Program-made: the position numbers and the translations under genes | Shown: in pieces, positions 2,998 through 63,030 of the stretch | Layout of the letters: each line of letters starts with the position of its first letter | How positions within the stretch are numbered: the stretch's first letter is position 1 | From: Pecten maximus | Lineage: Eukaryota | DNA: 64,000 nucleotides | Direction of reading: 5' to 3' | Assembly (NCBI RefSeq): GCF_902652985.1 | Contig: NC_047024.1 | Coordinates: forward strand, 35,960,001 to 36,024,000 | The notes under the pieces: model-generated | Database searches by the model: none | Seen by the model: only the letters and a program-made list of their open reading frames with translations | What the model was told of the DNA's origin: nothing

Positions 2998-3028
<31 letters not shown>

Positions 3029-3824
3029 ATTTCTTCATAAACAATCATTCTGGCTCGAACTGGCCACACCACACACCAAAAGAAAAAGAAAACAAATATG
3101 TAACGTTAGAAATACATCTGTACCTGTAACTAGAACAATTAGAGCAATTACCATTACGGATTTTATCAACTTTAATGAAACTTAAATCTACACAAGCTTA
3201 CGCATATTACAAACTGAACTGTTATATTTACATTTGGTTCCATTTACATGTGTATATTATAATATTATAGGATTACTTGGAACTTCATCAGTCATTATAA
3301 CCCTTCAAACTTCCGCTAGCAGCACAATATTACAAGTGAACAATTAATTTACTTCGAGGAATTTCCAGACCAAAACTACGGTTAGCATTGTGTAGTAATA
3401 CGGGGAAACACTAGGGAATTAAGTGACAGTCATAGGTGACTTTATTTTTATTGATGTCGTACTTGTTATAAATCATCAATTTCTCAAAAATACCCAGATA
3501 TCTCTCTAGTCTGATATTCTATTGTAAGAATTCTGAGAATGATCTACGAGTACATTAATTAACCAAAATATCGCTTTCATTTTCTAATGTCTATCGATTG
3601 TAAAATGTGGCACCGAATTACAAATATCGTTATTCACAATTATTCTGATGATATAAACACGACTGAGTGTTCGACAGGACTAAATAAAGGTAAATGGGTG
3701 GGTACGACTTAATATCTTAGACAGCTGAGTCAGGAGCAACCTGTAACACCCTCAACATAAACACACAGCCAACAACAAGTTTACCCCCGATTTGCCACAA
3801 ACAATGACATTATATGTAACCTAC

Positions 3825-3867
3825 CATCAGAATTTATGAGAATTGGTGTATCGGGTGAGGAATTCAT
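3825..3867 (-). CDS. Putative first coding exon of a gene continuing off the left edge (MNSSPDTPILINSD, phase 1)
   Basis: ATG at 3867, donor G|GTAGGT at 3824, CpG-containing 5' UTR with promoter motifs just upstream; product not identifiable from 14 codons. Confidence 0.55.
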
Positions 3868-3943
3868 CGTGTCCCCAACATTTGATTCCGTCCCGTCTAC
3901 ACCTAAAACGCTGTCAAAAGTCCACACTCCTCGTCCGATTCAT

Positions 3944-4006
3944 TCTGCCATTTTCTTGACATCGAGCTGGTACAAAACAGGAAGTGATCGTACGCCGTCA
4001 CGTGAT
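3944..4006 (-). promoter_or_regulatory. Core promoter: YY1-like AAAATGGC (about 3947-3954), ETS site CAGGAAGTG (3978-3986), CLEAR/USF E-box GTCACGTGAT (3997-4006)
   Basis: Three housekeeping-promoter motifs clustered within 60 bp directly upstream of an exon with a good donor. Confidence 0.6.
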
Positions 4007-4224
4007 CATGTAATGTAGGTTCGCAGAACTTTGCTTGAGCAAATAGATGATATGAACACCGACAATACTTACGCATAACTCAGTACTATGTGCTAGAAAT
4101 AATGTTACCAATAAATCATATAAAAAGTAATATTATCCAATTAACCAATTTTATCATTTTACTACATTTTCCACATACAAACATAACTGTTAGGTGTGTT
4201 CGTTTAAAATACATAAAGGATTCC

Positions 4225-4799: not shown

Positions 4800-5280
4800 A
4801 TGTTGAATGCTTTATTTCACCCAATGCGACTTTTAGATATTACACCTACTTGGTGCCATGGTGATATTGAAATGAACCCTGGTCCCAATAGATCCGATTT
4901 AAGTGTGCTTCGTTTGAATACTAGATTCTACAAATATTATGAACAACTTATTTGAACTTGATAGTATTTAACTACAGATTTTGATAGTTTGTTTTTACCT
5001 TATCGATTGGAAAATCTTCAAATAAAAAAATAAAGGTAATAAATATGAAAAGGCAAACTTTTTATAGTAATCTCGATCCAAACTTTTGATAGATCAAGGA
5101 ATTCTATATTCCTCGATTCTTTAGAAAAATGCTTAAAATCTTTATGACTAAACAAAAATATATTTGTATATATATATATATGAAATAGCTTATAGTGACC
5201 AATAATAATCCCAGGTACTTAATGATAACTTTTCTTCCATTTCTACTATTGATGATTCTAACGTAAACTTACCAGAATTT
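4800..5280 (+). mobile_element. Decayed CR1/L2-type LINE ORF2 5' part: 2A-like motif followed by the start of the AP endonuclease
   Basis: 4854-4886 encodes CHGDIEMNPGP, then NRSDLSVLRLNTR (first APE motif); further disrupted LINE-like patches follow. Confidence 0.65.
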
Positions 5281-5515
5281 GTTACGAAATGTGCGAATTA
5301 TTCCAGTCATATTGTTGTCAGCGTAGACGGCGTTTATAGAGTTGTGTCTATGCTTGGTATAAGAAAAAGCAATGGGTCACGAAAAAATAGTCATCGGATG
5401 AAGTTTATTCGTGCGTTGTGCTTTGTGAACTTTCGACAAAGTTTGGTTATAAATGATTGTTATTCAAACTCCGCCAGTATGGAATTCAGGGAAACCTACT
5501 GGCATGGTTGTCTAG

Positions 5516-6576
5516 TATGTGGCGCCGTTTTACTATTTATTCCCAGTTGGTGATATCACCTATTCAAATAGGTGATATCACCAATTCATTTTTCAAATAA
5601 GTGATATCACCCATTCGAATAGGTCATATCACTTCATGAAACGAATAGGTGATATCACCTATTCGAATAGGTGATATCACTTATAAAATTCTTAAGTGAT
5701 ATCACCTATTCGAATGAGTGATATCACCTATTCGAATAGGTGATATCACTTATAAAATTTGGAAAACTTTATGCTCCCCAATTCCATCAAGTGTAACATG
5801 TCTTATTTGGGAGCAGTCGTTTGTATTGATTCTAAAGTGATATCACTTATTCGAATAGGTGATATCACTTATGAAATTTTATAAGTGATATCACCAATTC
5901 GAATAGGTGATATCACTTTTAAAATTTCATAAGTGATATCACCTATTCGAATAGGTGATATCACTCATTCGAATAGGTGATATCACTTAATGAAACGAAT
6001 AGGTGATATCACCAATTCGAATAGGTGATATCACTTAAGAATATTTTTAAGTGATATCACCTATTCGAATAGGTGATATCACCTATTCGAATGAGTGATA
6101 TCACCTATTCGAATTGGTGATATCACCTATTCGAATTGGTGATATCACCTATTCGTTTCATTAAGTGATATCACCAATTCGAATTGGTGATATCACGTAT
6201 TTGAAAAATGAATTGGTGATATCACCTATTCGAATAGGTGATATCACTGATTGAATAGGTGATATCACCTATTCGAATAGGTGATATCACCAAATGGGAA
6301 TAAATAGTAAAACGGCGCCCCATAGGTATCACCTATTCGAATTGGTGATATCACCTATTCGTTTCAATAAGTGATATCACCTATTCGAATGAGTGATATC
6401 ACCTATTCGAATGGGTGATATCGCTTAATGAAACGAATAGGTGATATCACTCATTCGAATAGGTGATATCACTTAAAAAAGTTCTTAAGTGATATCACCT
6501 ATTCGAATAGGTGATATCACTCATTTGAATAGGTGATATCACCAAATGGGAATTAATAGTAAAACGGCGCCCCATA
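5516..6576. mobile_element. Non-autonomous DNA transposon (IS3EU-like termini) filled with palindromic 22-bp repeats
   Basis: About 30-bp TIRs tatgtggcgccgttttactatttattccca / tgggaattaatagtaaaacggcgccccata; exact 6-bp TSD GTCTAG at 5510-5515 and 6577-6582; extra right TIR at 6295-6324. Confidence 0.85.
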
Positions 6577-6771: not shown

Positions 6772-8549
6772 CATTGAGCCATTCGAAGAGCGACGGTGCG
6801 CCTGGTCGAAATCGGTCACCACAAATGATGACTTATTAGGACATTTTTTACGCTGTCAAAAATTGTGTGTGTGTGTGTTGTATCTTTGTTGTTTTGTTTG
6901 TTTTTTTAGGAGTTCGGGGGGGGGGGGGGGGGGGGGGGGGTTAAAATCTTCTCGGTACCCAACGTGCCTCTTGCAAAGCATTGTAACCTGCAAATGCCGC
7001 GATTCTCTAAACACCACGAGCTGTAGATATTGAATGATGTCAGGAATCCGCGTCATTTCATTTAAAGTGTTGAATTAAACCTGCATTGTCCAAACATATG
7101 CTGGGAGGGGGTGAGGGTTGGGTGCGCTTTTCGTGATTCAAGATAAATTGCATGTATACTTTTTAAAATTACTTGTTGAATCTATTCAGGTTGCAGTACT
7201 ACTAATTTGGGGCTAGATATCTAATTATCCAACATACGCAATACTTCCCCTCTTTATACACATTATATTTCAGCACTCTCTCCGTAAACACCAGTAATCA
7301 TTCTCGTTTTTTATATAATTGACATTTCATAGTTATCAGTCGTCAAACCTATAACATACACGAGATGAAGATCGAGATACATAGCATATCTTATTATCAT
7401 TTGTTACATGGTACGCTGAAGTGTATCGATTTCTGCTTCTGAGCGGTACACCTTAAATATATATATATTAATCAAAAAAAGTGAAACGGATGATATCGGT
7501 CGGACACTTTTAATACATTTTAAACGTGGTTGGTCGATTTCGAAAATGGTACACATTTTTTTTCAATACACATTTAATTACAAAAGTGGATAAAAGTGTA
7601 CCTGCCACCAGTGAAAATATTTCCTTTGGAGACCGCAAAATGAGGCCTATTCATTTCTAAAAAAAAACCCAACACTTCCAGTAATTTTATTTCACTATTA
7701 AATCACTAAAGTTTCACCAAAACAAAAATTTTAATCGCTGATTTATTATACTTTTAACATTATTATAATTCGGGGGGGGGGGGGGGGTTAACAACACCAT
7801 GAAGGCATTGCTCTCCGGTAGTCGCTCCTAACAACACGTCTCTGTCCATCTTGCTACGTACTGGACATCATGGTTATGTTACAGCCGCCACGTACTTGGC
7901 AGTCACTAGCAGGTTTCCGTAGGTTTGATCTCTATGGTACACACGCGGACCTACGTTTTTTTGTGACGTAGGCCCGCGCCTACCCCCATGTGGTTAAAAG
8001 GTGGAATAATAAGTGTACCGTTTCATATTAAGTTTGAATCGGGTTTCGTAAATATGATTATGTGTACGACTTAATGTATTCGGGGTGTTCAGCACACGCG
8101 ATTCTTCTCTAGCTGTACATATTCATTCTTTGCGATTTCTGATTAATATTGGCTTTTAGTCTTAACTCTCCCAAGACTTTATACAAACTACTGCCATACC
8201 TAGTAAACCTGTTTCACAATCACGCGACTCTTCATACTAGGCGTGGGTTTACGACAGAGAACAAAACTCTCCAACAACTACCTAAATGTTTTACGTGATT
8301 TTACTTGAAGGGATTCAGATTTTTTTTCTCAATATGCTAAAGTATCAATGGATTGTTGACAACATCCGTGACTTTAGAGAGATGTGGGTTGGTGAAAACT
8401 AGTTAAGTTTTGGGTCGTCACTTGGATATCACTATTTGGTTTCTGTATGCACATTGGAGTGGGATAACATGTCAGGAGGCGCAACTGGGAGGGGCAAGGG
8501 AGAAGGAAAAACGGGTGGGCAGGAACAATGTGAACGGATGGAAGCGCGA

Positions 8550-11500
8550 GGGACACGACCAGGGCCCAGGCGGACGCTCGGGACACGACCAGGCCCAGCC
8601 GGGACACGCGGGGACACGACAAGGCCCCAGTGCGGACACGCGGGACACAACCATGACCAAGGCGGACACGCGGGACACGACCAGGGCCCAGGCCGGTACG
8701 CGCGGGAGACGACCAGGCCCCAGGCGTACACAGCGGGACACGACCAGGGCCCAGGCCCGGACACGCGGGGACGCGACCAGGGCCCAGGCGGACGCGCTGT
8801 GACACGACCAGGGCCCAGCCGGACACCCGGGACACGACCAGGGGCCAGCGGACACGCGGGACACGACCAGGGCCCAGGCGGACGCGCGGGACACAACCAG
8901 GACCAAGGCGGACACGCGGGACACGACCAGGGCCCAGGCGGGACACCCGGGGACACGACCAGGCCCAGCCGGACGCGCGGGAGACGACCAGGCCCCAGGC
9001 GGACACGCGGGACACGACGAGGGCCCAGGCGGACGCGCGGGACACGACGAGGGCCCAGGCGGACACGCGGGACACGACCAGGGCCCAGGCGGACACGCGG
9101 GACACGACGAGGGCCCAGGCGGACGCGCGGGACACAACCAGGGCCCAGGCGGACACGCGGGACACGACCAGGGCCCAGGCGGACGCGCGGGACACGACGA
9201 GGGCCCAGGCGGACACGCGGGACACGACGAGGGCCCAGGCGGACACGCGGACACGACCATGGCCAGGCGGACTCGCGGGACACGACCAGGGCCCAGGCGG
9301 ACACGCGGGACACGACCAGGCCCCAGGCGGACGCGCGGGACACGACCAGGGCCCAGGCGGACGCGCGGGACACGACCCAGGGCCCAGGCGGACACGCGGG
9401 ACACGACCAGGCCCAGGCGGACGCGCGGGACACGACCAGGGCCCAGGCGACACCCGGGACACGACCAGGGCCCAGGGCGGACACGCGGGACACGACCAGG
9501 GCCCAGGGGACACGCGGGACACGACCAGGCCCCAGGCGGACGAGCGGGACACAACCAGGACCAAGGCGGACACGCGGGACACGACCAGGGCCCAGGCGGA
9601 CACCCGGGACACGACCAGGGCCCAGGCGGACGCGCGGGACACAACCAGGGCCCAGGCTGACGCGCGGGACACGACCAGCGCCAGGCCGGACACCCGGGAC
9701 ACAACCAGGACCAAGGCGGACACGCGGGACACGACCAGGGCCCAGGCGGACGCGCGGGAGACGACCAGGCCCCAGGCGGACACGCGGGACACAACGAGGG
9801 CCCAGGCGGGCGCGCGGGACACGACCAGGGCCCAGGCGGACACGCGGGACACGAACCAGGGCCCAGGCGGACGCGCGGGACACGACCAGGGCCCAGGCGG
9901 ACGCGCGGGACACAACCAGGGCCCAGGCGGACGCGCGGGACACAACCATGGGCCCAGGCGGACGCGCGGGACACAACCAGGGCCCAGGGGGACGCGCGGG
10001 ACACGACCAGGGCCCAGGCGGACACCCGGGACCACGACGAGGCCCAGGCGGACACGCGGGACACGGACCAGGGCCCAGGCGGACGCGCGGGACACGACCA
10101 GGGCCCAGGCGGACCACGCGGGACACGACCAGGGGCCAGCCGGACACGCGGGACACGACCAGGGCCCAGGCGGACGCGCGGGACACGACCCAGGCCCCAG
10201 GCGGACGCGCGGGACACGACCAGGCCCAAGCGGACGCGCGGGACACGACCAGGCCCCAGGCGGACGGCGGGACACGACCAGGGCCCAGGCGGACGAGCGG
10301 ACACGACCAGGGCCCAGGCGGACACCCGGGACCACGACCAGGGCCCAGGCGTACACCCGGGACACGACCAGGCCCCAGGCCGGACACCCGGGACACGACC
10401 AGTGCCCAGTCGGACACCCGGGACACGACCATTCCCCAGGCGTACACCCTGGACACAGCTTATGGGCCAGGCACCAGGGACGCGCGGTACACGACCAGGC
10501 CCAGGCGGACACGCGGGACACGACCAGGGGCCAGCCGGACACGCGGGACACGACCAGGGCCCAGGCGGACACCCGGGACACGACCAGGGGCCAGCCGACA
10601 CGCGGTGACACGACCAGGGCCCAGGCGGACACCCCGGGACACGTACGAGGGCCCAGGCGGACACGCGGGACACGACCAGGGCCCAGGCGGACGCGCGGGA
10701 CACGACCAGGGCCCAGGCGGACACGCGGGACACGACCAGGGGCCAGCCGGACACGCGGGAAACGACCAGGGCCCAGGCGGAAGCGCGGGACACGACCAGG
10801 CCCCAGGCGGACGCGCTGGGACACGACCAGGGCCCAGGCGGACGCGCGGACACGACAGGGGCCCCAGGCGGACACCCCGGGACATCGGACCAGGGCCCAG
10901 GCGGACACCCGGGACCGACCAGGCCCCAGGCGGACACCCGGGACACGACCATGGCCCAGGCGGACGAGCGGACACGACCAGGGGCCAGCCGGACACGCGG
11001 GGACACGACCAGGGCCCAGGGACGCGCGGGACAAGACAGGCCCCAGGCGGACGCGGGACAAGACCAGGGCCCAGCCGGACACGCGGGACGCGACCAGGCG
11101 CCAGGCGGACGCGCGGGACACGACCAGGCCCCAGGCGGACACGCGGGACGCGACCAGGCCCAAGCGGACGCGCGGGACACGGACCAGGCCCCAGGCGGAC
11201 GCGCGGGACACGACCAGGTCCCAGGCGGACGAGCGGGACACGACCAGGGCCCAGGCGGACACCGGGACACGACAGGGGCCAGGCGGACACCCGGGACACG
11301 ACCAGTGCCCAGGCGGACACCCCGGGACACTACCAGGCCCAGTGCTTACACCCGGTACACAGCGAGGGGCCAGGCGGACGCGCGGGACACGACCAGGGCC
11401 CAGGCGGACACGCGGGACACGACCAGGGCCCAGCCGGACACGCGGGACACGAACCAGGGCCCAGGCTGACACCCGGGAAACGACCAGGACCAGCCGGACA

Positions 11501-14500
11501 CCCGGGGACACGACCAGGCCCCAGGCGGACACCCGGGACACGACCAGGGACCAGGGCGGACACGCGGGACACCAACCAGGGCCCAGGCGGACACGCGGGA
11601 CACAACCAGGCCCCAGGCGGGACACGCGGGACACGACCAGGGGCCAGGCGGACACGCGGGACACGACCAGGGCCCAGGCGGACACGCGGGACACAACCAG
11701 GCCCAGGCGGACACGCGGGACACAACCAGCCCCAGGCGGGACACGCGGGACACGACCAGGGGCCAGGCGGACACGCGGGACACGACCAGGGCCCAGGCGG
11801 ACACGCGGGACACAACCAGGGCCCAGGCTGGACACGGGGACACAACCAGGGCCCAGGGCGGACACGCGGGACACAACCAGGGCCCAGGCGGACACGCGGG
11901 ACACGACCAGGGCCCAGGCGGACACGCGGGACACGACCAGGCCCCAGGCGGACACGCGGGACACAACCAGGGACCAGGCGGACGCGCGGGGACACGACCA
12001 GGGGCCCAGCCGGACACGCGGGACACGACCAGGCCCCAGGCGGACGCGCGGGACACGACCAGGGCCCAGGCGGACACGCGGGACACGACCAGGGCCCAGG
12101 CGGACGCGCGGGACACAACCAGGGCCCAGCCGGACGCGCGGGACACAACCAGGGCCCCAGGCGGACACGCGGGACACGACCAGGGCCCAGGCGGACACGC
12201 GGGACACGACCAGGACCCAGGCGGACGCGCGGGACACGACCAGGACCAGGCAGGACACCCGGGACACGACCAGGGCCAGGCCGGACACCGGGACACGACC
12301 AGGGCCAGGCGGACACCCGGGACACGACCAGGGCCCAGGCGGACACCCGGGACACGACCAGGGCCCAGGCGGACACGCGGGACACAACCAGGACAAGGCG
12401 TACACGCGGGACACGACCAGGGCCCAGGCGGACACCCGGGACACGACCAGGCCCCAGGCGGACACGCGGGACACGACCAGGGCCCAGGCGGACACCCGGG
12501 ACACGACCAGGCCCCAGGCGGACACGCGGGACACGACCAGGGCCAGGCCGGACACGCGGGACACGACCAGGCCCCAGGCGACACGCGGGACACGACCAGG
12601 GCCCATGGCGGACACCCGGGACACGACCAGGGCCCAGGCGGACACGCGGGACACAAACCAGGGCCCAGGCGGACACCCGGGACAGACCAGGCCCCAGGCG
12701 GACACGCGGGACACGACCAGGGCCCAGGCGGACACGCGGGACACGACCAGGGCCCAGCCGGACACGCGGGACACGACCAGGGACCAGGCGGACACCCGGA
12801 CACAACGAGGGGCCCGGCGGACACGCGGACGCGACCAGGGCCAGGCGGACACCCGGGACACGACGTAGGGGCCAGGCGGACACGGCGGGGACACGACCAG
12901 GGCCCAGGCGGACACCCGGGTACACGACCAGGGCCCAGGCGGACGCGCGGGACACGACCAGGGCCCAGGCGGACACCCGGGACACAACGAGGGGCCAGGC
13001 GGACACGCGGACGCGACCAGGGCCCAAGCGGACACCCGGGACACGACCAGGCCCCAGGCGGACACCCGGGACACGACCAGGCCCCAGGCGGACACGCGGG
13101 ACACGACCAGGCCCAGGCGGACACGCGGGACACGACGAGGGCCCAGGCGGACGCGCGGGACACGACCAGGGCCCAGGCGGACACGCGGGACACAAACCAG
13201 GGCCCAGGCGGACAACCGTGACACAACCAGGGACCAGCCGGACACGCGGGACGCGACCAGGGCCCAGGCGGACACGCGGGACACGACCAGGGACCAGCCG
13301 GACACCGGGACACGACCAGGCCCCAGGCGGACGCGCGGGTGACACGACCAGGGCCCAGGCGGACACGCGGACACGACGAGGGCCCAGGCGGACACGCGGG
13401 ACACGACCAGGGCCCAGGCGGACACGCGGACACGAGAGGCCCAGGCGGACACGCGGGACACGACCAGGGACCAGGCGGACGCGCGGGACACGACCAGGGC
13501 CCAGCCGGACACGCGGGACACGACCAGGCCCCAGGCGGACACCCCGGGACACGACCAGGCCCCAGGCGGACACCGGACGCGACCAGGGTCCGGGACAGCG
13601 GACACAACCAGGCCCAGCGGACACCCGGACAACCAGGCCCTCAGGGACGCGGGATCAGACCGGCCAGGTGTACACGACGGGACAAGACCAGGCCCAGGGA
13701 CCCGCACACGACAGGCCCCAGGCGACACGCGGGACACGACCAGGCCATCGGACACCAGGTGACCGACAGTGCCCAGGGACACGCAGGGACACGAGATGGG
13801 CCAGGGACCAAGACAGGGCCAGCCGACACCGGGACCGACAGGCCAGGGACGCGGGCACACCGGTGCAGCGGGGACGACACGCGAGGCCCAGGACGCGGAC
13901 AAACGAAAGGCCAGCCGGACACGCTGGACGACCAGGCTCCTGCTTGACGCTCGGGACTAGACAGGCCACTGAACGGGACACGACGAGGACCAGGCGTACA
14001 GCGGTACACGCCAGGGGATCAGACGCACACACGAGCCCAGCGGACGCAGGGACACTGACCAGGGCCAGCCGATAGCGCGGATACATAGGCCCAGGTCGAC
14101 GCGGGTACACGAACCAGGGCCCGCGGACACGCGGGCACTACAGAGTGGCTCATGCGACTGCGTCTACAAGACACAGGGGAACAGCCCGGGCGGGGCACGA
14201 CGAGGGGCCCGCGGACGCGCGGGGGCACGACCCCGGGCAGCAGCGGACACGACCCGGGGCCCCGGCGAAGGGGGAAAAGACCCGGCCCCCGGGGGAGCGC
14301 GGGGGAGACCAGGGGACGCGGACACGACCAGGGCCCGCCGGGCGGCGGGGCCCGACCAGGGCCCAGCCGGGGCACCCGGGGCACGACCAGGGAAACCCGG
14401 GGGGGGCCGGGGGGACAACCAGACCCGGCGGGCGCCCGGGACAAACCAGGACCCGCCGGGGGACGCGGGACACGACCAGGGCCCGGGGAGCGCGGGACAG

Positions 14501-17500
14501 ACCCGGCCCAGCCGGGAAACCCGGGACACGACCAGGGGCCCCGCCGGACACGCGGGGACAGACCGGGGCCAGTGCGGACACGCGGGACACGACCAGTGGA
14601 CCAGGCGGACGCGCGGGACACGACCATGGCCAGGCCGGACACGCGGGGACACGACCAGGGCCCAGCTCGGACACGCGGGACACGACCAGGGCCCAGGCGG
14701 ACACGCGGGACACGACCAGGGACCAGTGCGGACGCGCGGGACACGACCAGGGCCCAGGCGGACACGCGGGACACGACCCAGGGCCCAGCCGGACACGGCG
14801 GACACGACCAGGGCCCAGGCGGACACGCGGGACACGACCAGGGACCAGGCGGACGCGCGGGACACGACCAGGGCCAGGCCGGACACGCGGGACACGACCA
14901 GGGCCCAGGCGGACGCGCGGGACACGGACCAGGGCCCAGGCGGACGCGCGGGAACACGACCAGGGACCAGGCGGACACGCGGGACACGACCAGGGACCAG
15001 GCGGACGCGCGGGACACGACCAGGGCCAGGCCGGACACGCGGGACACGACCAGGGCCAGCCGGACACGCGGGACACGACCAGGGCCCAGGCGGACACGCG
15101 GGACACGACCAGGGACCAGGCGGACGCGCGGGACAGGACCAGGGCCAGGCGGACAGCGGGACACGACCAGGGCCCAGGCGGACGCGCGGTGACACTGACC
15201 AGGGCCCAGGCGGACGCGCGGGACACGACCCAGGACCAGGCGGACACGCGGGACACGACCAGGGACCAGGCGGACGCGCGGGACAAGACCAGGGACCAGG
15301 CGGACACGCGGGGACACGGACAAGGGCCAGGCCGGACACGCGGGGACACGACAGGGACCAGGCGGACGCGCGGGACACGACAGGGCCAGGGCCGGACACG
15401 CTGGGACACGACCAGGGACCAGGCGGACGCGCGGGACACGACCAGGGCACAGCCGGACACGCGGGACACGACAGGGCCAGGCCGGACGCGCGGGACACGA
15501 CAGGCCCAGGCGGACGCGCGGGTACACGACCAGGGACCAGGCGGACGCGCGGGACACGACCAGGGACCAGGCGGACGCGCGGGACACGACCAGGGACCAG
15601 GGCGGACGCGCGGGACACGACCAGGGACAGGCGGACGCGCGGGACACGACCAGGGACCAGGGCGGACGCGCGGGACAGACCAGGGCCCAGCCGGACACGC
15701 GGGACACGACCAGGCCCCCGGGGGACGGCGGGACAGCCAGGGCCGGCCGGACCGGGGACACGACCAGGCCCCCCGGCGGACACGCGGGACAACCAGGGAC
15801 CAGGCGGACGCGCGGGACAGACCCGGGCCAGGGGGACGGCCGGGACACGACCGGGAAAACCCGGCGGGCGGCGGGACACGACCAGGGCCGCCGGGCCGCG
15901 GGAAAAGACAGGCCCCGGCGGAACGCGGACAGACCAGGGCCAGGCGGGGCCGGGGGACAGACCAGGGCCCCGCCGGACCGCGGGAAAAACCAGGGCCCAG
16001 GGAAGCGGGACAGACCCGGGCCCGGCGGGCGGACACGAAGGCCGGGGGACGCGGGGGACACGACCGGCCAGGGGGACAGCGGAAGACGGGCCCGGGGCCG
16101 GGCACGCGGGGGCCGCCGGGCCCCCCGGGGGCGCGCGGGGAAAGAAGGGCCGGGGACGCGCGGGGCACGACCCGGGGCCAGCCGGACCACCCCGGGCAAG
16201 CCGGAGGGCCCGGAGGGGCGCCGGGACACCCAGGGCCAGGCCGACACGGCAGACAGGCCAGCCGACACCCGGGGGCCGACCGGCCCCAGGCGGGCCGCGG
16301 GACCGCGGGGGCCAGGGGGCCCCGGGACACGACCAGGGGCCCGGCGGACCCACACAACCCCCAAGCCGGGCGCGGGGAAAGACAACCAGCGGACGCGCAC
16401 AAACCAGGGCCAGGCACACGCACCACAGGGGCCACCGACGCGGGGACACACAGGCCAGGGGGAACCGGCACACGGGCCGGCGGGGGCGGACACGACCAGG
16501 CCCCGCCGGACACGCGGGACCGACCAGGGGCCCCCCGGCGGGGGACCGACCAGGGCCCGCCGGACCGGGGGGACCGACCCGGGCCCCGGGACACCGGGGC
16601 CGACCCGGGGCCCCCGCGAAAGGGCCGGGACACGACCAGGGCCCCGGCGGGAAACCGGGACACGACCCGGGGGCCCCCGCCGGGCCGGGGGAACGACCAG
16701 GGCCAGGCGGGCCCGCGGGACGCGACCAGGGCCCAGGCGGACGCGCGGACACGACCCAGGGCCCAGCCGGACGCGCGGGACACGACCAGGGCCCAGGCAG
16801 ACACCCGGGACACGACCAGGGCCCAGCCGGACGCGCGGGACACGACCAGGGCCCAGGCTGACACGCGGGACACGACCAGGGCCCAGGCAGACACGCGGGA
16901 CACGACCCAGGGACCAGGCGGACGCGCGGGAGACGACCAGGGACCAGGCGGACGCGCGGGACACGACCAGGGCCCAGGCAGACACGCGGGACACGACCAG
17001 GGCCCAGCCGGACACGCGGGACACGACCAGGGCCCAGGCGGACACGCGGGACACGACCAGGGCCCAGGCAGACACGCGGGACACGACCAGGGCCCAGCCG
17101 GTACACGCGGGACACGACCAGGGCCCAGGCGTGACACGCGGGACACGACCAGGCCCAGGCGGACACGCGGGACACGACCAGGGCCCAGGCAGACACGCGG
17201 GACACGACCAGGGCCCAGCCGGACACGCGGGACACGACCAGTGCCCAGGCTGACACTGCGGGCACACCCCCCAGGCGACCGCGGGACAGACCAGGCCCCG
17301 GCAACGCGGGACACACCCGGCCCGGCAACACCGGGGCACGACAGGGGGAGGCACCGGGGGGCACGGGGCCAGGGCCCCGGCGGGCACGGGGCAGACCCGG
17401 GGCCCCGCGACCCGGGACACGACCAGGGGCCCCGCCGGACCGGGGGACACGACCAGGGCCCCGGGGGACCGCGGACAGACCAGGGCCAGGCAAAACGCGG

Positions 17501-18020
17501 GACACGACCCGGGGCCCCGGCGGACCGCGGGGAAAAGACCGGGCCCCCGGCGGAAAGCGGGACACGACAGGGCCCGGCGGACCGCGGGACAGACCCGGGC
17601 CCACCACACGCGGGAACGACGGGGCCCAGCCGGGGAACGGGGACAACGACCAGGCCCAGCCCGGGCACGCGGGACACACACCGGCCACCACACCAGGGCC
17701 CGGGGAACGCGGGGCACGACCGGGCCCCGCGGACCGCGGGACAACCGGGGCCCCGCCGGACACGCGGGGACACGACCAGGGCCCCAGCGGACACGCGGGA
17801 CACGACAAGGGCCAGCCGGACAACGGGGACACGACCAGGCCCAGCCGGACACGCGGAAGACCGGGACCAGGCGTGAAGCGCGGGACAGACCAGGGACCAG
17901 CTGACGCGCTGGGACACTCCATGGACCATTCTGACTCGCGTGACACGGACCAGTGACAGGCGTGACACGCTGGACACGACCAGTGCCCCAGGCAGACACC
18001 CGTACACGACCAGGGCCAGT
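8550..18020. repeat. 30-bp tandem array in its G-rich form (cgcgggacacgaccagggcccaggcggaca); T->G version of the unit at 18045-18228
   Basis: Periodic 30-mer with almost no T on the + strand; noisy blocks at about 13600-14550, 15700-16730 and 17260-17830. Confidence 0.95.
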
Positions 18021-18044
18021 AGTACTCTCTGGACACTACATTTC

Positions 18045-18228
18045 CCCATGCTTACTCTATTACACTACTATTACCATTCTTACACTCGGACACGAACCAA
18101 GTTACATTCTACCCCTTTACACTACCATTTACCATTCTTACTCTCTTTACACTACCATTTCCCATTCTTACACTCTTTACACTACCATTCCCCATTCTTA
18201 CTCTCTTTACACTACCATTTCCCATTTC
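18045..18228. repeat. AT-rich, G-free form of the same 30-bp unit (ctctttacactaccatttcccattcttaca)
   Basis: Several tandem copies contiguous with the G-rich array. Confidence 0.9.
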
Positions 18229-18334
18229 CGTCTTCATTCTCCTGTGGTGAGAACCTTATTTCCAAGATAGGTGATCGGTGTCATAATGTAAGTACACCTG
18301 ACTAGGGTTGTAGATGAAACTGGTGAGAATGACT

Positions 18335-18575
18335 TAAGTTTGGTTTCCAGATTTTCCAACAGACTATTTACATCTGACTTGCCTTTGTTTTCTTAATGTA
18401 ATTGAAGAGCTTATTAGAACCTGTGAGAGATACCTAGCATAGTCTCGTCACCCATACTTTGTAGATATATTGACGATGTGTTATCTTTAAATAACAAAAA
18501 TCTTATTTGACCTTGTAGATCGTAAAGAACTAGAAATCAAGGACACTACAGTCACCCTTCAACATCAGCTTCTTT
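18335..18575 (+). mobile_element. Penelope-like retroelement RT remnant
   Basis: Disrupted frames give FQIFQQTI, RYIDDVLSLNN (from 18463) and KELEIKDTT..SAS, matching PLE RT motifs. Confidence 0.65.
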
Positions 18576-18799
18576 AAAAACCTTCAAAGCATGTTATCAA
18601 ATTCTGCATGTCTGGATTTTCCATATTACCTGTAAGCTGGCTCATTTAACTTTTATTTTGTTTTTTGTACGAGATTGTCTATTACAGGTTCAACTTCTAT
18701 ATCAAACTGATGGAGAATCCCATCACAATATACAATGTACTGTACTAAAAAAACATAAGGAAACTCACTTTATAGTAACCATCTAATTAAAACCGCCCT

Positions 18800-19452
18800 A
18801 CTTTAATCATTGATCTGTAAACAATACTTGCTATCGTTATTTCTCATACTTCATATGTAGGTTCCCCTTCACGGATCCCTAGTTGTGTCCATCAAATTTT
18901 GAAGCTGACAGGGAAATTGAAATGGCCGACATGCAGCCATCTTGGATTTTGACAGTTGAAGTTTAAGCTTTATCCTTGAGAAGTAATTGAAGGATTTATA
19001 TGAAACTTGGTATAAATTCCTCTTCGTCCCTTTAAGTTGTGCTTATTCAGTTTTGAGTATGATTTGATAAACAAAATGGTGGACAGGAAGCCACCTTAGA
19101 TTTTGACAGTTTATACTTGTTATCATTGTAATGCTAGAAGTACTGAAGTATATTTCTCAAACTGGCTATGTAAGGTACACTCAGTTCCCTGTTATGTCCA
19201 TTTGATTTCAAGTCTGATGAGAGAAACATGATGGCTGACAGGTGGCAATATTTGAATTTATTAACGCTAGTCCTTATTTCTTTTAAAAGCTCTTCATGGG
19301 TAATCTCCGATTACATCAATTAATTTTGAAGGTTCCACTTGCTTTCAAATGATAAAAAAGGAAAGATGAGAAAAGGAGAGAAAGGTCAGTCTTACATAGA
19401 CCCAATAAATATCATTCAATGATGGGTGTCAAGATCCCTTGGGGATCTCGCG
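18800..19452. mobile_element. Degenerate interspersed repeat, possibly Helentron-like, with internal repeats and a terminal hairpin
   Basis: Recurrent aaatgg..gaca..gcagccatcttggattttgacagtt modules; hairpin agatcccttggggatct at about 19432-19448. Confidence 0.4.
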
Positions 19453-19478
19453 TCTTATAATGTGGCTTAAAAGGATCA

Positions 19479-22400
19479 TTGTATAGACTAGATATAGGGA
19501 CATTGTATAGACTAGATATAGGGATATTGTATAGACTAGATATAGGGACATTGTATAGACCAGATATAGGGACATTGTATAGACCAGATATAGGGACATT
19601 GAGTAGACCAGATATAGGGACATCGTATAGACCAAGTATGGAAACATTGTATAGACCAGATATAGGGACATTGTATAGACCAGATAGGGAAACATTGTAT
19701 AGACCAGATATAGGAACATTGTATGGACCAGATATAGGAACATTGTATAGATCAGATGTAGGAACATTGTATAGACCAGATATAGGGACATTGTATAGAC
19801 CAGATAGGGAAACATTGTATAGACCAGATAGGGAAACATTGTATAGACCAGATATAGGGACATTGTATAGACCAAATATAGGGACATTGTATAGACCAGA
19901 TACAGGGACATTGTGTAGACCAGATATAGGGACATTGTATAGACCAGATATGGAAACATTGTATAGACCAGATATAGGAACATTGTATAGACCAGATATA
20001 GGGACATTGTATAGACAAGATATAGGGACATTGTATAGACCAGATATAGGGACATTGTATAGACCAGATATAGGGACATTGTATAGACCAGATATAGGGA
20101 CATTGTATAGACCAGATACAGGGACATTGTGTAGACCAGATATAGGGACATTGTATAGACCAGATATGGAAACATTGTATAGACCAGATATAGGAACATT
20201 GTATAGACCAGATATAGGGACATTGTATAGACAAGATATAGGGACATTGTATAGACCAGATATAGGGACATTGTATAGACCAGATATAGGGACATTGTAT
20301 AGACCAGATAGGGAAACATTGTATAGACCAAATATAGGAACATTGTATAGACCAGATATAGGAACATTGTATAGACCAGATATAGGGACATTGTATAGAC
20401 AAGATATAGGGACATTGTGTAGAGCAGATATAGGGAGATTGAGTAGACCAGATATAGGGACATTGTATAGATCAGATATAGGGACATTGTATAGACCATA
20501 TATAGGGACATTGTATAGACCAGATAAAGGGACATTGTATAGACCAGATATAGGGACATTGTATAGACCAGATATAGGGACATTGTATAGACCAGATATT
20601 GAAACATTGTACAGACCAGATATTGAAACATTGTATAGACCAGATATAGGGACATTGTATAGACCAGATATAGGAACATTGTATAGACCAGATATAGGGA
20701 CATTGTATAGACCAGATATGGAAACATTGTATAGACCAGATATAGGAACATTGTATAGACCAGATATAGGGACATTGTATAGACCAGATATAGGAACATT
20801 GTATAGACCATATATAGGGACATTGTATAGACCAAATACAGGAACATTGTATAGACCAGATATAGGGACATTGTATAGACCAGATAGGGAAACATTGTAT
20901 AGACCAAATATAGGAACATTGTATAGACCAGATATAGGAACATTGTATAGACCAGATATGGAAACATTGTATAGACCAGATATAGGAACATTGTATAGAC
21001 CAGATATAGGGACATTGTATAGACAAGATATGGAAACATTGTATAGACCAGATATAGGAACATTGTATAGACCAGATATAGGGACATTGTATAGACCAGA
21101 TATAGGGACATTGTATAGACCAGATATAGGGACATTGTATAGACCAAATATAGGGACATTGTATAGACCAGATATGGAAACATTGTATAGACCAGATATA
21201 GGAACATTGTATAGACCAGATATAGGGACATTGTATAGACCAGATATAGGGACATTGTATAGACCATATATAGGGACATTGTATAGACAAGATATAGGGA
21301 CATTGTATAGACCAGATATAGGGACATTGTATAGACCAGATATAGGGACATTGTATAGACCAGATATAGGGACATTGTATAGACCATATATAGGGACATT
21401 GTATAGACCAGATATAGGGACATTGTATAGACCAGATATAGGGACATTGTATAGATCAGATATAGGGACATTGTATAGACCAGATATAGGGACATTGTAT
21501 AGACCATATATAGGGACATTGTATAGACCAGATATAGGGACATTGTATAGACCAGATATAGGAACATTGTATAGACCATATATAGGGACATTGTATAGAC
21601 CAGATATAGGGACATTGTATAGACCAGATATAGGGACATTGTATAGACAAGATATAGGGACATTGTATAGATCAGATATAGGGACATTGTATAGATCAGA
21701 TATAGGGACATTGTATAGACCAGATATAGGGACATTGTATAGACCAGATATAGGGACATTGTATAGACCAGATATAGGGACATTGTATGGACCAGATATA
21801 GGGACATTGTATAGACCAGATATAGGGACATTGTATAGACCAGATATGGAAACATTGTATAGACCAGATATAGGAACATTGTATAGACCATATATAGGGA
21901 CATTGTATAGACCAGATATAGGGACATTGAATAGACCAGATATAGGGACATTGTATAGACCAGATATAGGGACATTGAATAGACCAGATATAGGGACATT
22001 GTATAGACCATATATAGGGACATTGTATAGACCAGATATAGGGACATTGTATAGACCAGATATAGGGACATTGAATAGACCAGATATAGGGACATTGTAT
22101 AGACCAGATATAGGGACATTGAATAGACCAGATATAGGGACATTGTATAGACCAGATATAGGGACATTGTATAGACCAGATATAGGGACATTGAATAGAC
22201 CAGATATAGGGACATTGTATAGACTAGATATAGGGATATTGTATAGACTAGATATAGGGACATTGTATAGACCAGATATAGGGACATTGAATAGACCAGA
22301 TATAGGGACATTGTATAGACCAGATATAGGGACATTGTATAGACCAGATATAGGAACATTGTATAGATCAGATGTAGGAACATTGTATAGACCAGATATA

Positions 22401-22707
22401 GGGACATTGTATAGACCAGATATAGGGACATTGTATAGACCAGATATAGGGACATTGTATAGACCAGATATAGGGACATTGTATAGACCAGATATAGGGA
22501 CATTGTATAGACCAAACAGGGAAACATTGTATAGACCAGATATAGGGACATTGTATAGACCAGATATAGGGACATTGAATAGACCAGATATAGGGACATT
22601 GTATAGACCATATATAGGGACATTGTATAGACCAGATATAGGGACATTGTATAGACCAGATATAGGGACATTGAATAGACCAGATATAGGGACATTGTAT
22701 AGACCAG
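19479..22707. repeat. 24-bp minisatellite (ttgtatagaccagatatagggaca), about 134 copies
   Basis: Highly homogeneous array with no frame-shifting indels; source of the 1099, 1088 and 1129 aa ORFs. Confidence 0.98.
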
Positions 22708-29297: not shown

Positions 29298-29369
29298 CTG
29301 CAACAAACACAATTCATAATGTAACATTAGTTATAGAACAGGATATTATATTTAGGATATATACACATT

Positions 29370-30440
29370 TCATATGAAAATTATAGGACTGATTATAAGG
29401 AAAGACAATTATATTTAGGACATGTACACATTCCATCAGGAAAACTGATGATAGAGTAGGACAATTATATCTAGGGCATGTACATATTTCATATGGAAAT
29501 TATAGGACTGATTATAGGGAAAGACAATTATATTTAGGACATGTACACATTCCATCAGGAAAACTGATGATAGAGTAGGACAATTATATCTAGGGCATGT
29601 ACATATTTCATATGGAAATTATAGGACTGATTATAGGGAAAGACAATTATATTTAGGACATGTACACATTCCATCAGGAAAACTGATGATAGAGTAGGAC
29701 AATTATATCTAGGGCATGTACATATTTCATATGGAAATTATAGGACTGATTATAGGGAAAGACAATTATATTTAGGACATGTACACATTCCATCAGGAAA
29801 ACTGATGATAGAGTAGGACAATTATATCTAGGGCATGTACATATTTCATATGGAAATTTTAGGACTGATTATAGGGAAAGACAATTATATTTAGGACATG
29901 TACACATTCCATCAGGAAAACTGATGATAGAGTAGGACAATTATATCTAGGGCATGTACATATTTCATATGGAAATTATAGGACTGATTATAGGGAAAGA
30001 CAATTATATTTAGGACATGTACACATTCCATCAGGAAAACTGATGATAGAGTAGGACAATTATATCTAGGGCATGTACATATTTCATATGGAAATTATAG
30101 GACTGATTATAGGGAAAGACAATTATATTTAGGACATGTACACATTCCATCAGGAAAACTGATGATAGAGTAGGACAATTATATCTAGGGCATGTACATA
30201 TTTCATATGGAAATTATAGGACTGATTATAGGGAAAGACAATTATATTTAGGACATGTACACATTCCATCAGGAAAACTGATGATAGAGTAGGACAATTA
30301 TATCTAGGGCATGTACATATTTCATATGGAAATTATAGGACTGATTATAGGGAAAGACAATTATATTTAGGACATGTACACATTCCATCAGGAAAACTGA
30401 TGATAGAGTAGGACAATTATATCTAGGGCATGTACTCATT
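29370..30440. repeat. 119-bp tandem repeat (about 9 copies) built from two diverged halves of about 60 bp
   Basis: Alternating gacaattatatttaggacatgtacac / gacaattatatctagggcatgtacat; copies almost identical. Confidence 0.95.
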
Positions 30441-30466
30441 TCACAAGGAAACGGACTGATTACAGC

Positions 30467-47121: not shown

Positions 47122-48922
47122 TTGTACCAGGTGTTGTACCAGGTGTTGTACCAGGTGTTGTACCAGGTATTATTCCATGTGTTGTACCAGGTGTTGTACC
47201 AGGTGTTGTACCAGGTGTTGTACCAGGTGTTGTACCAGGTATTGTACCAGGTGTTGTACCAGGTATTGTACCAGGTGTTGTACCAGGTATTGTGTCAGGT
47301 GTTGTACCAGGTGTTGTTCCAGGTGTTGTACAAGGTGTTGTACCAGGTATTGTACCAGGTATTGTACCAGGTATTGTGTCAGGTGTTGTACCAGGTGTTG
47401 TTCCAGGTGTTGTACCAGGTGTTGTACCAGGTGTTGTACCAGGTGTTGTTCCAGGTGTTGTACAAGGTGTTGTACCAGGTATTGTACCAGGTATTGTACC
47501 AGGTATTGTGTCAGGTGTTGTACCAGGTGTTGTACCAGGTGTTGTACCAGGTGTTGTACCAGGTGTTGTGTCAGGTGTTGTACCAGGTGTTGTACCAGGT
47601 GTTGTACCAGGTATTGCACCAGGTGTTGTACCAGGTGTTGTACCAGGTGTTGTACCATGTATTGTACCAGGTATTGTACCAGGTATTGTACCAGGTGTTG
47701 CACCAGGTGTTGTACCAGGTATTGTACCAGGTGTTGTACCAGGTATTGTACAAGGTATTGTACCAGGTATTGTACCAGGTGTTGTACCAGGTATTGTACC
47801 AGGTATTGTGTCAGGTGTTGTACCAGGTATTGTACCAGGTGTTGTACCAGGTATTGTACCAGGTGTTGTACCAGGTATTGTACCAGGTATTGTGTCAGGT
47901 GTTGTACCAGGTATTGTACCAGGTGTTGTACCAGGTATTGTACCAGGTATTGTGTCAGGTATTGTGTCAGGTGTTGTACCAGGTGTTGTGTCAGGTATTG
48001 TGTTAGGTGTTGTACCAGGTGTTGAACCAGGTGTTGTACCAGGTGTTGTACCAGGTGTTGTACCAGGTATTGTACCAGGTATTGTACCAGGTATTGTACC
48101 AGGTGTTGTACCAGGTATTGTACCAGGTATTGTGTCAGGTGTTGTACCAGGTATTGTACCAGGTGTTGTACAAGGAGTTGTACCAGGTATTGTACCAGGT
48201 GTTGTACCAGGTGTTGTACCAGGTATTGTGTCAGGTGTTGTACCAGGTATTGTACCAGGTGTTGTACCAGGTGTTGTACCAGGTGTTGTACCAGGTGTTG
48301 TACCAGGTGTTGTACCATGTATTGTACCAGGTGTTGTACCAGGTATTGTACCAGGTGTTGTACCAGGTGTTGTACCAGGTATTGTACCAGGTGTTGTACC
48401 AGGTGTTGTACCAGGCATTGTACCAGGTGTTGTACCATGTATTGTACCAGGTGTTGTACCAGGTGTTGTACCATGTATTGTACCAGGTGTTGTACCAGGT
48501 GTTTTACCAGGTGTTTTACCAGGTGTTGTACCAGGTGTTGTACCAGGTATTGTACAAGGTGTTGTACCAGGTATTGTACAAGGTGTTGTACCAGGTGTTG
48601 TACCAGGTATTGTACCAGGTGTTGTACCAGGTGTTGTACCATGTATTGTACAAGGTGTTGTACCAGGTATTGTACCAGGTATTGTACCAGGTGTTGTACC
48701 AGGCATTGTACCATGTATTGTACCAGGTAGTGTACCAGGTGTTGTACCAGGTATTGTACCAGGTGTTGTACAAGGAGTTGTACCAGGTATTGTACCAGGT
48801 ATTGTACCAGGCATTGTACCAGATATTGTACCAGGTATTGTACCAGGTATTGTACAAGGAGTTGTACCAGGTGTTGTACCAGGTGTTGTACCAGGTATTG
48901 TACCAGATATTGTACCAGGTAT
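47122..48922. repeat. 12-bp minisatellite (ttgtaccaggtg/a), about 150 copies
   Basis: Direct inspection; source of the CCTR, VVPG and TTPG ORFs. Confidence 0.98.
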
Positions 48923-56468: not shown

Positions 56469-56696
56469 GTAAGATTTATCATGGTTAAGTCACCATTTAC
56501 TAAGAACAATTTTACAGTTTCTATGAAATCATTAATTTTTGTGGATGTTGTTATTTTCATTGTTTTTGTAAGTACTCTTGGTCAAGAAATACATGTGCCC
56601 CTGAATTGTTTGAAGCTGAACACGATTTTAACAGCAAAATGAGCCAATTTAGGCAGTTGATACTTGTCAAACATGATCTGTGTGACTTTTCACATG

Positions 56697-60155: not shown

Positions 60156-60842
60156 TTCAATAAAGGACCTACATATCTACCCCAGGCTAAGCCATATTCA
60201 AATCATGAAATTTATAATGAAAAGATACAGTATTTTCTAAATAATATGTAGATTGTTGTTCATAGCTACGATAGTATGTTCTGGCCCGTGATAGCCACAG
60301 ATTAAACTAATGCTTTATTCATGAGTATTAAAGCACCAAGTCTCAGACCGTTGTGTATTGACAGATATTTAAAACCTTTACGGCATCAGACAGATTTGTT
60401 TATTTATTATCAGCAAAGTTTGTACAGGTTACGGCATGTGTAATGTACGTGTTGTGTCAAAAGAATATGTAATGAATTAGAAACATTTTACTTTGTAATT
60501 AATTTCTGTTGACATGCCAGCAGTGTACTTGTCTTTTGTTAGGTATCCGGATATCCACCAAAGATTATCATAAGATAGCAATTGCACATGGTATATTAGG
60601 AACTTAATGAATACAGTTTACATAACTTCATAGGAATTGTGTAGACCTAAAAACTGTTTGTTTAGCCAGCCTATAATATAATAATAAGAATTTATTACCA
60701 TATTTGTCCAGATAAGACGTAGAGCACATTACACTTTATCAAACCATATACGTGAAATAAAGGTCGGAAAAGAAAAACATAATATATTCTTAAGAAACAC
60801 AAGAATATGATGTACATAGCAAGTTGCTTCTCTGTGACAGAG

Positions 60843-61464: not shown

Positions 61465-63030
61465 ATTATACTACATTAACCTCTTATACGCCATATCAAT
61501 ATAATTACATTATACCTCTCCGGATAACAGCAGATAAAGGAGGACACAGTAGACCGACAGAGACAAGAGACAACATGAGACCGCGGATAACATCAGAGCA
61601 AGATACGTACAGTATACCACCCAGCAAGAGACGTACAGTATACCACCAGAGCAAGATAAGCAGGTAACCACCATGCAAGAGACGACAGGAGACCACCAGA
61701 GCAGGAGACGACAGGAGACCACCAGAGCAAGAGACGACAGGAGACCGCCAGAGCAAGAGACGACAGGAGACCACCAGAGCAAGAGACGACAGGAGACCAC
61801 CAGAGCAAGAGACGACAGGAGACCACCAGAGCAAGAGACGACAGGAGACCACCAGAGCAAGAGACGACAGTGAGACCACCAGAGCAAGAGACGACAGGAG
61901 ACCACCAGAGCAAGAGACCACAGGAGACCACCAGAGCAAGAGACGACAGGAGACCGCGGAGACCAGCAGAGCAAGAGACGACAGGAGACCACCAGAGCAA
62001 GAGACGACAGGAGGACAGCGGAGACCAGCAAGAGACGACAGGAGACCGCGGAGACCAGCAGAGCAAGAGACGACAGGAGACCGCGGAGACCAGCAGAGCA
62101 AGAGACGACAGGAGACAGCGGAGACCACCAGAGCAGGAGACGACAGGAGACCACCAGAGCAAGAGACGACAGGAGACCGCCAGAGCAAGAGACGACAGGA
62201 TACCACCAGAGCAAGAGACGATCAGGAGACCCACCAGAGCAAGATGACGGAAGGAGACCACCAGAGCAAGAGACGACAGGAGACCACAGAGCAAGAGACG
62301 ACAGGAGACCACCAGAGCAAGAGACGACAGGAGACCACCAGAGCAAGAGACCACAGGAGACCACCAGAGCAAGAGACGACAGGAGACCTGCGGAGACCAG
62401 CAGAGCAAGAGACGACAGGAGACCACCAGAGCAAGAGACGACAGGAGACCCCCAGAGCAAGAGACGACAGGAGACCACCAGAGCAAGAGACGACAGGAGA
62501 CCACCAGAGCAAGAGACGACAGGAGACCACCAGAGCAAGAGACCACAGGAGACCACCAGAGCAAGAGACGACAGGAGACCACCAGAGCATAGAGACGACA
62601 GGAGACCACCAGAGCAAGAGACGACAGGAGACCGCGGAGACCACCAGAGCAAGAGACAGGAGACCACCAGAGCAAGGACGACAGGAGACACCCAGAGCAA
62701 TGAGACGACAAGACCCCCAGAGCAAGAGGACGACAGGAGACCACCAGAGCAAGAGACGACAGGAGACCCCCCAGAGCAAAGTACACCAGAAGGACTAAGT
62801 GAGACCACCAGATGCAATGAGACTACAGTATACCACCCAGATCAATATAGCTTACATGTATTACCACCATTATTCAATATTTCCTACATTATACCACCAT
62901 ATGCAATAACTACATTATACCACCATATTCAATCTACTACATTATACACCATAGTCAATGATACCACATTTATACCACCATATCAATATACTACATTATA
63001 CCACCATATCAATATACTACATTATACCTC
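61465..63030. repeat. 26-bp tandem array: edges ccaccatatcaatatactacattata, centre (61680-62775) ccaccagagcaagagacgacaggaga (T->G form)
   Basis: Direct inspection; mixed units at both transitions. Confidence 0.93.

What the first reader, a model, noticed from the sequence alone, without database searches (positions are those of the whole stretch)
8460..18228. The 9.5-kb GC-rich array is an exact T->G transliteration of the AT-rich 30-mer at its own right edge
Seen: the edge unit ctctttacactaccatttcccattcttaca becomes cgcgggacacgaccagggcccaggcggaca, the array consensus, at all 30 positions when every T is replaced by G; A and C positions are unchanged. The change is gradual (mixed units at about 17900-18100). 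The native unit has no G on + (no C on -). Inference: most likely a base-calling or consensus failure on three-letter templates, since T/G and A/C are the spectrally paired dye channels in four-dye optical sequencing. If real, it would be a strand-specific, near-saturating T:A->G:C conversion (or a modified base misread) for which I know no mechanism.
Basis: partly seen in the sequence, partly recalled or inferred. Interest (0 to 1): 0.85.

Follow-up and report, generated by a model that had tools for sequence, protein, structure and literature searches.

The report
Miscalled scallop minisatellite: sequencing artefact
The 9.5-kb GC-rich array is not real DNA: it is an ordinary AT-rich 30-bp minisatellite of the king scallop that the PacBio Sequel miscalled (A read as C on the C-free strand, seen as T->G on +), and the error was kept in the published reference assembly.

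Summary
The array at 8550-18017 is a letter-for-letter T->G copy of the G-free 30-mer at 18023-18226, and the switch is gradual over about 17860-18130. I found a second case in the same window: the 26-mer array at 61594-62779 against the units at 62804-63028.

The genome is the published Pecten maximus assembly, matched on exact size and scaffold count. It was built from PacBio Sequel 1 continuous long reads, then polished with Arrow and with 10X Illumina data.

Contigs from four short-read-like runs of three samples were laid at only 80% likeness. None covers any of the 4.6 kb of G form tested. T-form words are present at depths far above single copy, although the assembly holds only about seven T-form units.

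A published report on Sequel reads describes the same error, A read as C in long C-free repeats, correct at first and then converted. A->C on the minus strand is T->G on plus.

Verdict: this is a base-calling artefact fixed in a reference assembly. The real locus is an ordinary minisatellite of about 37% GC. The artefact creates a false CpG-rich island and stop-free ORFs of up to 1,879 aa. Biological interest is low, but it is useful for assembly quality control.

The parts
8460..8549 (.). Non-repeat left flank, T-poor and G-rich: probably spill-over of the miscalling past the end of the array (inferred)
   Evidence: 8470-8549 has T 7/80 and G 36/80. Only 4 of 25,209 background 80-bp windows in 264 kb are as T-poor and as G-rich. 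T+G (54%) is close to that of the normal flank (66%). The flank is unique in the genome, so it cannot be checked against paralogues.
8550..17859 (.). G-form array: about 310 noisy copies of the 30-mer with nearly every T written as G. Artefactual text; the true sequence is the T form.
   Evidence: TRF: period 30, 79% matches, 9% indels. T 1%. 92.8% G at T-positions. Zero contig depth over 13400-17999 in 4 runs at 80% likeness.
17860..18129 (.). Mixed zone: units with both T and G at T-positions, in patches
   Evidence: T fraction at T-positions rises from 0.08 to 1.0. A converted half-unit at about 18087-18100 lies between T-form units.
18130..18226 (.). Clean T-form units (G-free on +, C-free on -): the true minisatellite sequence
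   Evidence: T fraction 0.92-1.0 and no G. Covered by contigs of all four runs; the anchored contigs reach 18174-18197.
61470..61680 (.). Second array, left edge: T-form units (61470-61521), then mixed units
   Evidence: T fraction 1.0, then 0.2-0.38.
61681..62769 (.). Second array, G-form core: 26-mer that is 26/26 identical to its edge unit after T->G
   Evidence: TRF 61594-62779. Hamming distance 0 after T->G against 8 without. G 301, T 3, C 3 at T-positions. No reads were laid on this array.
62770..63028 (.). Second array, right edge: mixed units (62770-62873), then T-form units
   Evidence: T fraction 0.2, 0.77, 0.93, 0.87, 1.0. TRF 62804-63028.

Best explanation
The real locus is an ordinary AT-rich minisatellite: a 30-bp unit, about 320 copies, 37% GC, with no G on the + strand and so no C on the - strand.

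In the PacBio Sequel 1 continuous long reads used for the Pecten maximus assembly, polymerase reads of the C-free (-) strand entered the array from the right and were called correctly for about 100-200 nt. The base caller then began to call A pulses as C. It kept doing so for about 9.3 kb and for about 90 nt beyond the array into unique sequence. On the + strand this reads as T->G.

Converted and unconverted reads are only 60% alike, so they cannot be aligned to each other. The assembler (wtdbg2) and Arrow therefore built the consensus from converted reads alone, possibly only a few of them while filling a gap, which would explain the raw-read-like indel noise. Illumina polishing with freebayes could not repair it, because true T-form reads do not map to the G form. 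At most it cleaned the edges.

The likely root cause is misassignment between the two nucleotide analogues that share a detection colour on Sequel 1 and differ only in pulse amplitude, when one of the pair is absent for a long time.

Shown: the transliteration, the platform, the absence of the G form from independent contigs, and the published precedent. Inferred: read direction, the A->C (rather than T->G) read-level error, and the amplitude mechanism.
For: 1. The transliteration is exact. It is saturating at T-positions only, and the A/T difference between units at the last position is mirrored as A/G in the G form.
2. A second array in the window shows the same thing with an unrelated 26-mer, so it is a property of composition and not of one sequence.
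3. G000 has 918,306,378 bp in 3,983 pieces, exactly the published P. maximus assembly. That assembly used Sequel 1 reads, wtdbg2, Arrow, 10X/freebayes applying only homozygous edits, and a second Arrow round that filled gaps from spanning reads.
4. Contigs of four runs from three samples, laid at 80% likeness, give zero depth in all 23 bins of 13400-17999. The T-form bin 18000-18199 has summed word depths of 18,571, 13,708, 16,894 and 1,119, against about 11-30 for single-copy contigs next to it. The assembly holds the T form only here, in about 7 units.
5. Mitsuhashi et al. 2019 report for PacBio Sequel reads that TAAAA is read as TCCCC and TTTTA as TTTTC. Reads 'start with TTTTA ... but mostly consist of TTTTC', and other reads of the same loci are unaffected. 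This is the same letter swap on the C-free strand with the same delayed onset.
6. The edges are asymmetric, as expected for one read direction. There is a correct start and patchy onset at the right, and T-poor, G-rich unique sequence just past the left end.
7. The array has 9% indels, and only 23 of about 320 units are exact, while neighbouring arrays are clean: 19477-22707 has 93% matches and 0% indels, and 29345-30451 has 98% and 0%.
Against: - No raw PacBio reads could be examined, because none of the listed runs was a served long-read run. The step at which the error arose and its strand are therefore inferred.
- The runs laid are Logan contigs with coded identities. The tool itself warns that holes in contig cover prove nothing and that summed depth is not copy number. 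A 77% GC sequence could also be under-represented in Illumina data.
- In the second array the T form and mixed units also appear at the left (exit) edge. The simple one-direction hysteresis picture does not predict that; it needs Illumina edge repair or real G in degenerate end units.
- Three shorter three-letter arrays (400-750 bp) in the 264 kb examined were not converted, so composition alone is not sufficient.
- I could not document the colour/amplitude pairing of Sequel 1 from the paper library.
Confidence: 0.92

Rival explanations
1. The conversion arose downstream of base calling, in the wtdbg2 consensus, Arrow polishing or gap filling, or in freebayes/bcftools editing, and not in the instrument's primary analysis.
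For: The assembly went through several consensus and editing rounds, including gap filling by Arrow. The array is of very poor consensus quality.
Against: None of these tools has a reason to replace one letter by another at every T-position while keeping A and C. freebayes edits would go towards the Illumina (T) form. The same conversion is documented in raw Sequel reads.
Confidence: 0.04
2. The G form is real DNA: a GC-rich minisatellite derived from the AT-rich one by a strand-specific, near-saturating T:A->G:C process. Short-read data miss it because of extreme GC content.
For: 77% GC sequence is under-covered by amplified Illumina libraries. Contig holes are not proof of absence (caveat).
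Against: - Zero cover in four runs of three samples over 4.6 kb, even at 80% likeness.
- T-form words are far more abundant than seven assembled units can explain.
- 93-98% conversion at T-positions only, with unit polymorphisms mirrored, is not how mutation behaves.
- An unrelated 26-mer 43 kb away shows the same swap.
- The T-poor stretch runs on into non-repeat flank.
- No known mechanism exists.
Confidence: 0.02
3. A modified base in the array (a hypermodified T, or a modified A on the other strand) made the polymerase or the caller misread it.
For: The error is base-specific and strand-consistent.
Against: In SMRT sequencing the call comes from the label of the incoming nucleotide. Known template modifications change kinetics, not identity, and those that mispair give transitions, not T->G or A->C (established knowledge). 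The Illumina-derived contigs read plain T. The same swap occurs in human TTTTA repeats on the same instrument.
Confidence: 0.01

Closest known systems
Systematic A->C conversion of long C-free tandem repeats in PacBio Sequel reads (Mitsuhashi et al. [quoted passage not shown]
   Same: Same instrument family. Same letter swap once strand is taken into account: A->C on the C-free strand is T->G on +. The whole repeat becomes a different repeat. Reads start correct and then convert.
   Different: That report concerns 5-bp A/T-only repeats in individual raw human reads, with other reads unaffected. Here the units are 30-bp and 26-bp three-letter minisatellites, and the error survived assembly and polishing into a chromosome-scale reference, over 9.5 kb and 1.2 kb.
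Strand-specific repeat-calling errors of nanopore base callers at telomeres (Tan et al. 2022, Genome Biol 23:180; PMC9414165)
   Same: A tandem repeat is systematically rewritten as another repeat (TTAGGG->TTAAAA, CCCTAA->CCCTGG). The error is strand-specific, is absent from an orthogonal platform, and co-occurs with correct repeats at read ends.
   Different: A different platform and cause: similar ionic-current profiles and a neural base caller. This assembly used no nanopore data.
Genuine GC-rich minisatellites
   Same: Tandem 30-bp units, high GC, many CpG and ApaI sites as written.
   Different: The written sequence has no support in independent read sets and is a mechanical letter swap of its own edge.

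Membership tests
PacBio Sequel systematic A->C repeat miscalling | Data produced on a PacBio Sequel | tested here: met
   G000's size and piece count equal the published P. maximus assembly, which was made from Sequel 1 reads.
PacBio Sequel systematic A->C repeat miscalling | Long template stretch without C on the read strand, with A written as C and other letters kept | tested here: met
   The - strand of both arrays is C-free in the T form. 92.8% and 98% of T-positions (+) read G, and A and C are kept. This was tested on the assembly text, not on reads.
PacBio Sequel systematic A->C repeat miscalling | Correct calls at the start of the repeat, conversion after a lag | tested here: met
   T form for about 100-200 nt at the right edges, then patchy, then converted. 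Illumina edge polishing may also contribute.
PacBio Sequel systematic A->C repeat miscalling | Converted form absent from orthogonal sequencing of the same DNA | tested here: met
   Zero depth over 13400-17999 in X1 and X2 (same sample as the best holder), X4 and X5. These are contigs, not raw reads.
PacBio Sequel systematic A->C repeat miscalling | Seen in raw subreads, on reads of one orientation, with some reads unaffected | not testable with these tools
Nanopore repeat-calling errors | Nanopore reads and a neural base caller | tested here: not met
   The assembly used PacBio, 10X Illumina and Hi-C only.
Real GC-rich minisatellite | Sequence present in independent read sets of the species | tested here: not met
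   No contig of four runs matches at 80% or more.

The most novel reading that the evidence does not exclude
The most novel reading still open is technical. Sequel-1-era reference assemblies may systematically carry false T-free (or A-free) GC-rich arrays wherever a three-letter minisatellite exceeds about 1 kb. There are two in this 64-kb window and none in the next 200 kb. Such arrays would produce false CpG islands, false restriction sites and stop-free ORFs that could inflate gene counts. That the G form is real DNA made by an unknown strand-specific T:A->G:C process is nearly excluded (about 2%).
Probability: 0.5. Interest if true: 0.35.

Novelty: not a real feature. Interest (0 to 1): 0.12.

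Why it matters
It removes an apparent biological oddity. About 10.7 kb of this window (9.5 kb plus 1.2 kb) is mis-written in a widely used chromosome-level reference.

As written, the array creates several false features:
- a 77% GC, CpG-dense 'island' in a 37% GC genome;
- an ApaI site about every 30 bp;
- open reading frames of up to 1,879 aa on both strands, because a T-free strand has no stop codons.

Anyone using this assembly for repeat, CpG, GC-content or gene-prediction work should mask such arrays. A simple screen would find them genome-wide: look for base-depleted tandem arrays whose letter-swapped unit matches their own edge and which have no short-read k-mer support.

Tried and rejected
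- Notes of this scan, searched by place and by words: nothing on this locus or on similar arrays. One note named the species.
- Left flank 8150-8560 searched in the genome for paralogues, to read the true letters of 8460-8549: the flank is unique, so no comparison was possible.
Prevalence therefore rests on 264 kb only.
- Three paper searches for a description of Sequel 1's colour/amplitude pairing of nucleotides, and the C9orf72 long-read paper, gave nothing usable. The channel argument stays an inference from memory.
- I did not run a genome-wide IUPAC search for long T-free runs, because it would need a long repetitive typed pattern.
- Real GC-rich satellite, modified base, and polishing-step origin were considered and rejected; see the rival explanations.
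- I did not treat the summed contig depth as a copy number, as the tool warns against it. I use only the contrast of two orders of magnitude.

Full report
**1. The observation**

The window has a 9.5-kb block at about 8550-18017 with 73-80% GC and almost no T, set in sequence of 30-40% GC. Tandem Repeats Finder calls it a 30-bp array of 320 copies with 79% matches and 9% indels. Directly to its right it calls a 7-copy 30-bp array at 18023-18226 that has no G.

- The two TRF consensus units agree at 29/30 after the swap, against 13 mismatches without it.
- No other single-letter swap comes closer than 12 mismatches.

I aligned all units with T and G treated as one letter. The twelve T-positions then read G 92.8%, T 1.8%, C 4.0%, A 1.4%, while A and C are kept. 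67 of the 73 T that remain inside the array sit on T-positions.

The difference between T-form units at the last position (A or T) reappears in the G form as A or G. The T fraction rises from 0.08 to 1.0 between 17860 and 18130, in patches. For example, a converted half-unit at about 18087-18100 lies between T-form units. Both unit forms occur only at this locus in the genome.

**2. A second case in the same window**

The T-free 26-bp array at 61594-62779 equals, at 26/26 positions after T->G, the G-free 26-mer at 62804-63028. In its core, T-positions read G 301, T 3, C 3. The unit is unrelated to the 30-mer, so the effect follows composition (no G on +, no C on -) and not one particular sequence.

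In the 264 kb I could read (the window plus 200 kb to its left), these are the only T-depleted stretches. Three shorter three-letter arrays are not converted: two G-free ones of 700 and 400 bp, and one C-free one of 750 bp.

**3. Where the sequence comes from**

The genome has 918,306,378 bases in 3,983 pieces. These are exactly the figures of the published king scallop (Pecten maximus) assembly (PMC7191990).

That assembly was made from PacBio Sequel 1 continuous long reads (66x) with wtdbg2. It was polished with Arrow and then with 10X Illumina reads through freebayes, applying homozygous edits only. [quoted passage not shown]

**4. Independent reads**

The look-up of sequencing runs returned runs of the species held as Logan contigs. 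I laid four of them on 13400-19399 at only 80% likeness, so that a real but noisily assembled G form could still be matched: X1 and X2 from the best-holding sample, X4 from a second sample, and X5 from a third.

- All 23 bins from 13400 to 17999 have depth zero in all four runs.
- Cover begins in the bin 18000-18199, the T form, with summed word depths of 18,571, 13,708, 16,894 and 1,119.
- Single-copy contigs just to the right have depths of about 11, 12, 28 and 30.
- Anchored contigs reach left to 18174-18197.

The tool warns that contig holes are not proof and that summed depth is not copy number, so I use only the contrast. The G form is nowhere. The T form is about two orders of magnitude more abundant than the seven units the assembly gives it, and it has no other home in the assembly. 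The run identities are coded. That X1-X3 are the 10X runs of the sequenced animal is my inference from the year, the shared sample, the contig totals near genome size, and the depth.

**5. A published precedent**

Mitsuhashi et al. (Genome Biol 2019; PMC6425644) describe PacBio Sequel reads in which TAAAA is read as TCCCC and TTTTA as TTTTC. [quoted passage not shown]

That error is A->C where C is absent. T was left alone there although G was absent too. On the minus strand our arrays are C-free, and A->C on minus is T->G on plus. The nanopore counterpart, in which telomere repeats are rewritten strand-specifically, is described in PMC9414165. It does not apply here, because no nanopore data were used.

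**6. How it most likely happened**

Steps marked 'inferred' are not shown.

- Reads of the minus strand travel right to left in window coordinates. They are correct for the first 100-200 nt of the array, then flicker, then call A as C throughout (inferred from the edge pattern and the precedent).
- Just past the left end, the non-repeat stretch 8470-8549 has T 7/80 and G 36/80. Only 4 of 25,209 background windows reach that combination, and T+G stays near the flank's normal value. This looks like the error persisting about 90 nt after the array ended (inferred; the flank is unique, and no reads were laid there).
- Converted and true reads are only 60% alike, so they form separate paths. The consensus was then built from converted reads only, perhaps from few of them. 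This fits the 9% indels and the fact that only 23 units are exact, while neighbouring arrays are clean.
- freebayes could not repair the interior, because true reads cannot map there. It may have cleaned the edges.
- The root cause is probably confusion between two nucleotide analogues that share a colour and differ only in pulse amplitude on Sequel 1, when one of the pair is missing for a long time. I found no paper to cite.

One detail is unexplained. The second array also has T-form and mixed units at its left (exit) edge. That needs edge repair by Illumina polishing, or real G in degenerate end units.

**7. Rivals**

- Real GC-rich satellite missed by short reads. It cannot explain the T-form excess, the saturating swap at T-positions only, the second unrelated unit, or the spill-over. 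About 2%.
- Modified base. It would change kinetics and not the called letter, the contigs read plain T, and the same swap occurs in human DNA on this instrument. About 1%.
- Origin in a consensus or polishing step rather than in base calling. This has no mechanism and is contradicted by the raw-read precedent. About 4%.

**8. Consequences and verdict**

As written, the array is a false 9.5-kb CpG-rich island with an ApaI site per unit. Because a T-free strand has no stop codons, it also carries open frames of up to 1,879 aa on both strands.

The true locus is an ordinary minisatellite of about 37% GC in a very minisatellite-rich region. The finding is a well-spotted artefact of a known kind, here fixed in a reference assembly. 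It is not a biological feature. Interest for biology is low; for assembly quality control it is moderate.

Noticed in passing
window 61470-63030: A second T->G transliterated array: a 26-mer, 26/26 after the swap, with 98% conversion in the core. T-form units are present at both edges.
   Followed up: yes
window 8374-18049, both strands: The T-free text creates stop-free ORFs of 1,243-1,879 aa in several frames on both strands. The second array does the same (up to 435 aa). Gene predictors could take them for genes.
   Followed up: partly
window 57352-60156 vs 61470-63030: The C-poor 22-mer (and 65-mer) array at 57.3-60.1 kb is related, in inverted orientation, to the 26-mer array (shared core ATATGGTGGT; local score 19 against 4 on the same strand). 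It was not converted. It contains C every 65-150 bp.
   Followed up: partly
window 55606-56472 (+): The end of this ORF (residues 228-288) matches the start of the Pfam intermediate filament rod (PF00038; E 2.8e-09, 37.5 bits, just under the 40-bit cut-off). It is probably the first exon of an intermediate-filament gene.
   Followed up: no
window 18800-19000: A very high-copy interspersed repeat: summed contig word depth of 0.3-1.1 million in all four runs, with many joints and loose ends at 18920-18964.
   Followed up: no
window 1-64000: Minisatellites are unusually dense: more than 15 separate arrays with 12-244-bp units, several of them 1-3 kb long (5-2370, 19477-22707, 47122-48920, 29345-30451). 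There is also a C30 run at 2999-3028 and a G25 run at 6916-6940.
   Followed up: no
L020 about 5001-5700 and L032 about 3701-4100 (G000:C10:35835001-35835700 and 35953701-35954100): G-free three-letter stretches of 700 and 400 bp that were not converted. They are useful as lower bounds on the length at which the artefact sets in.
   Followed up: partly
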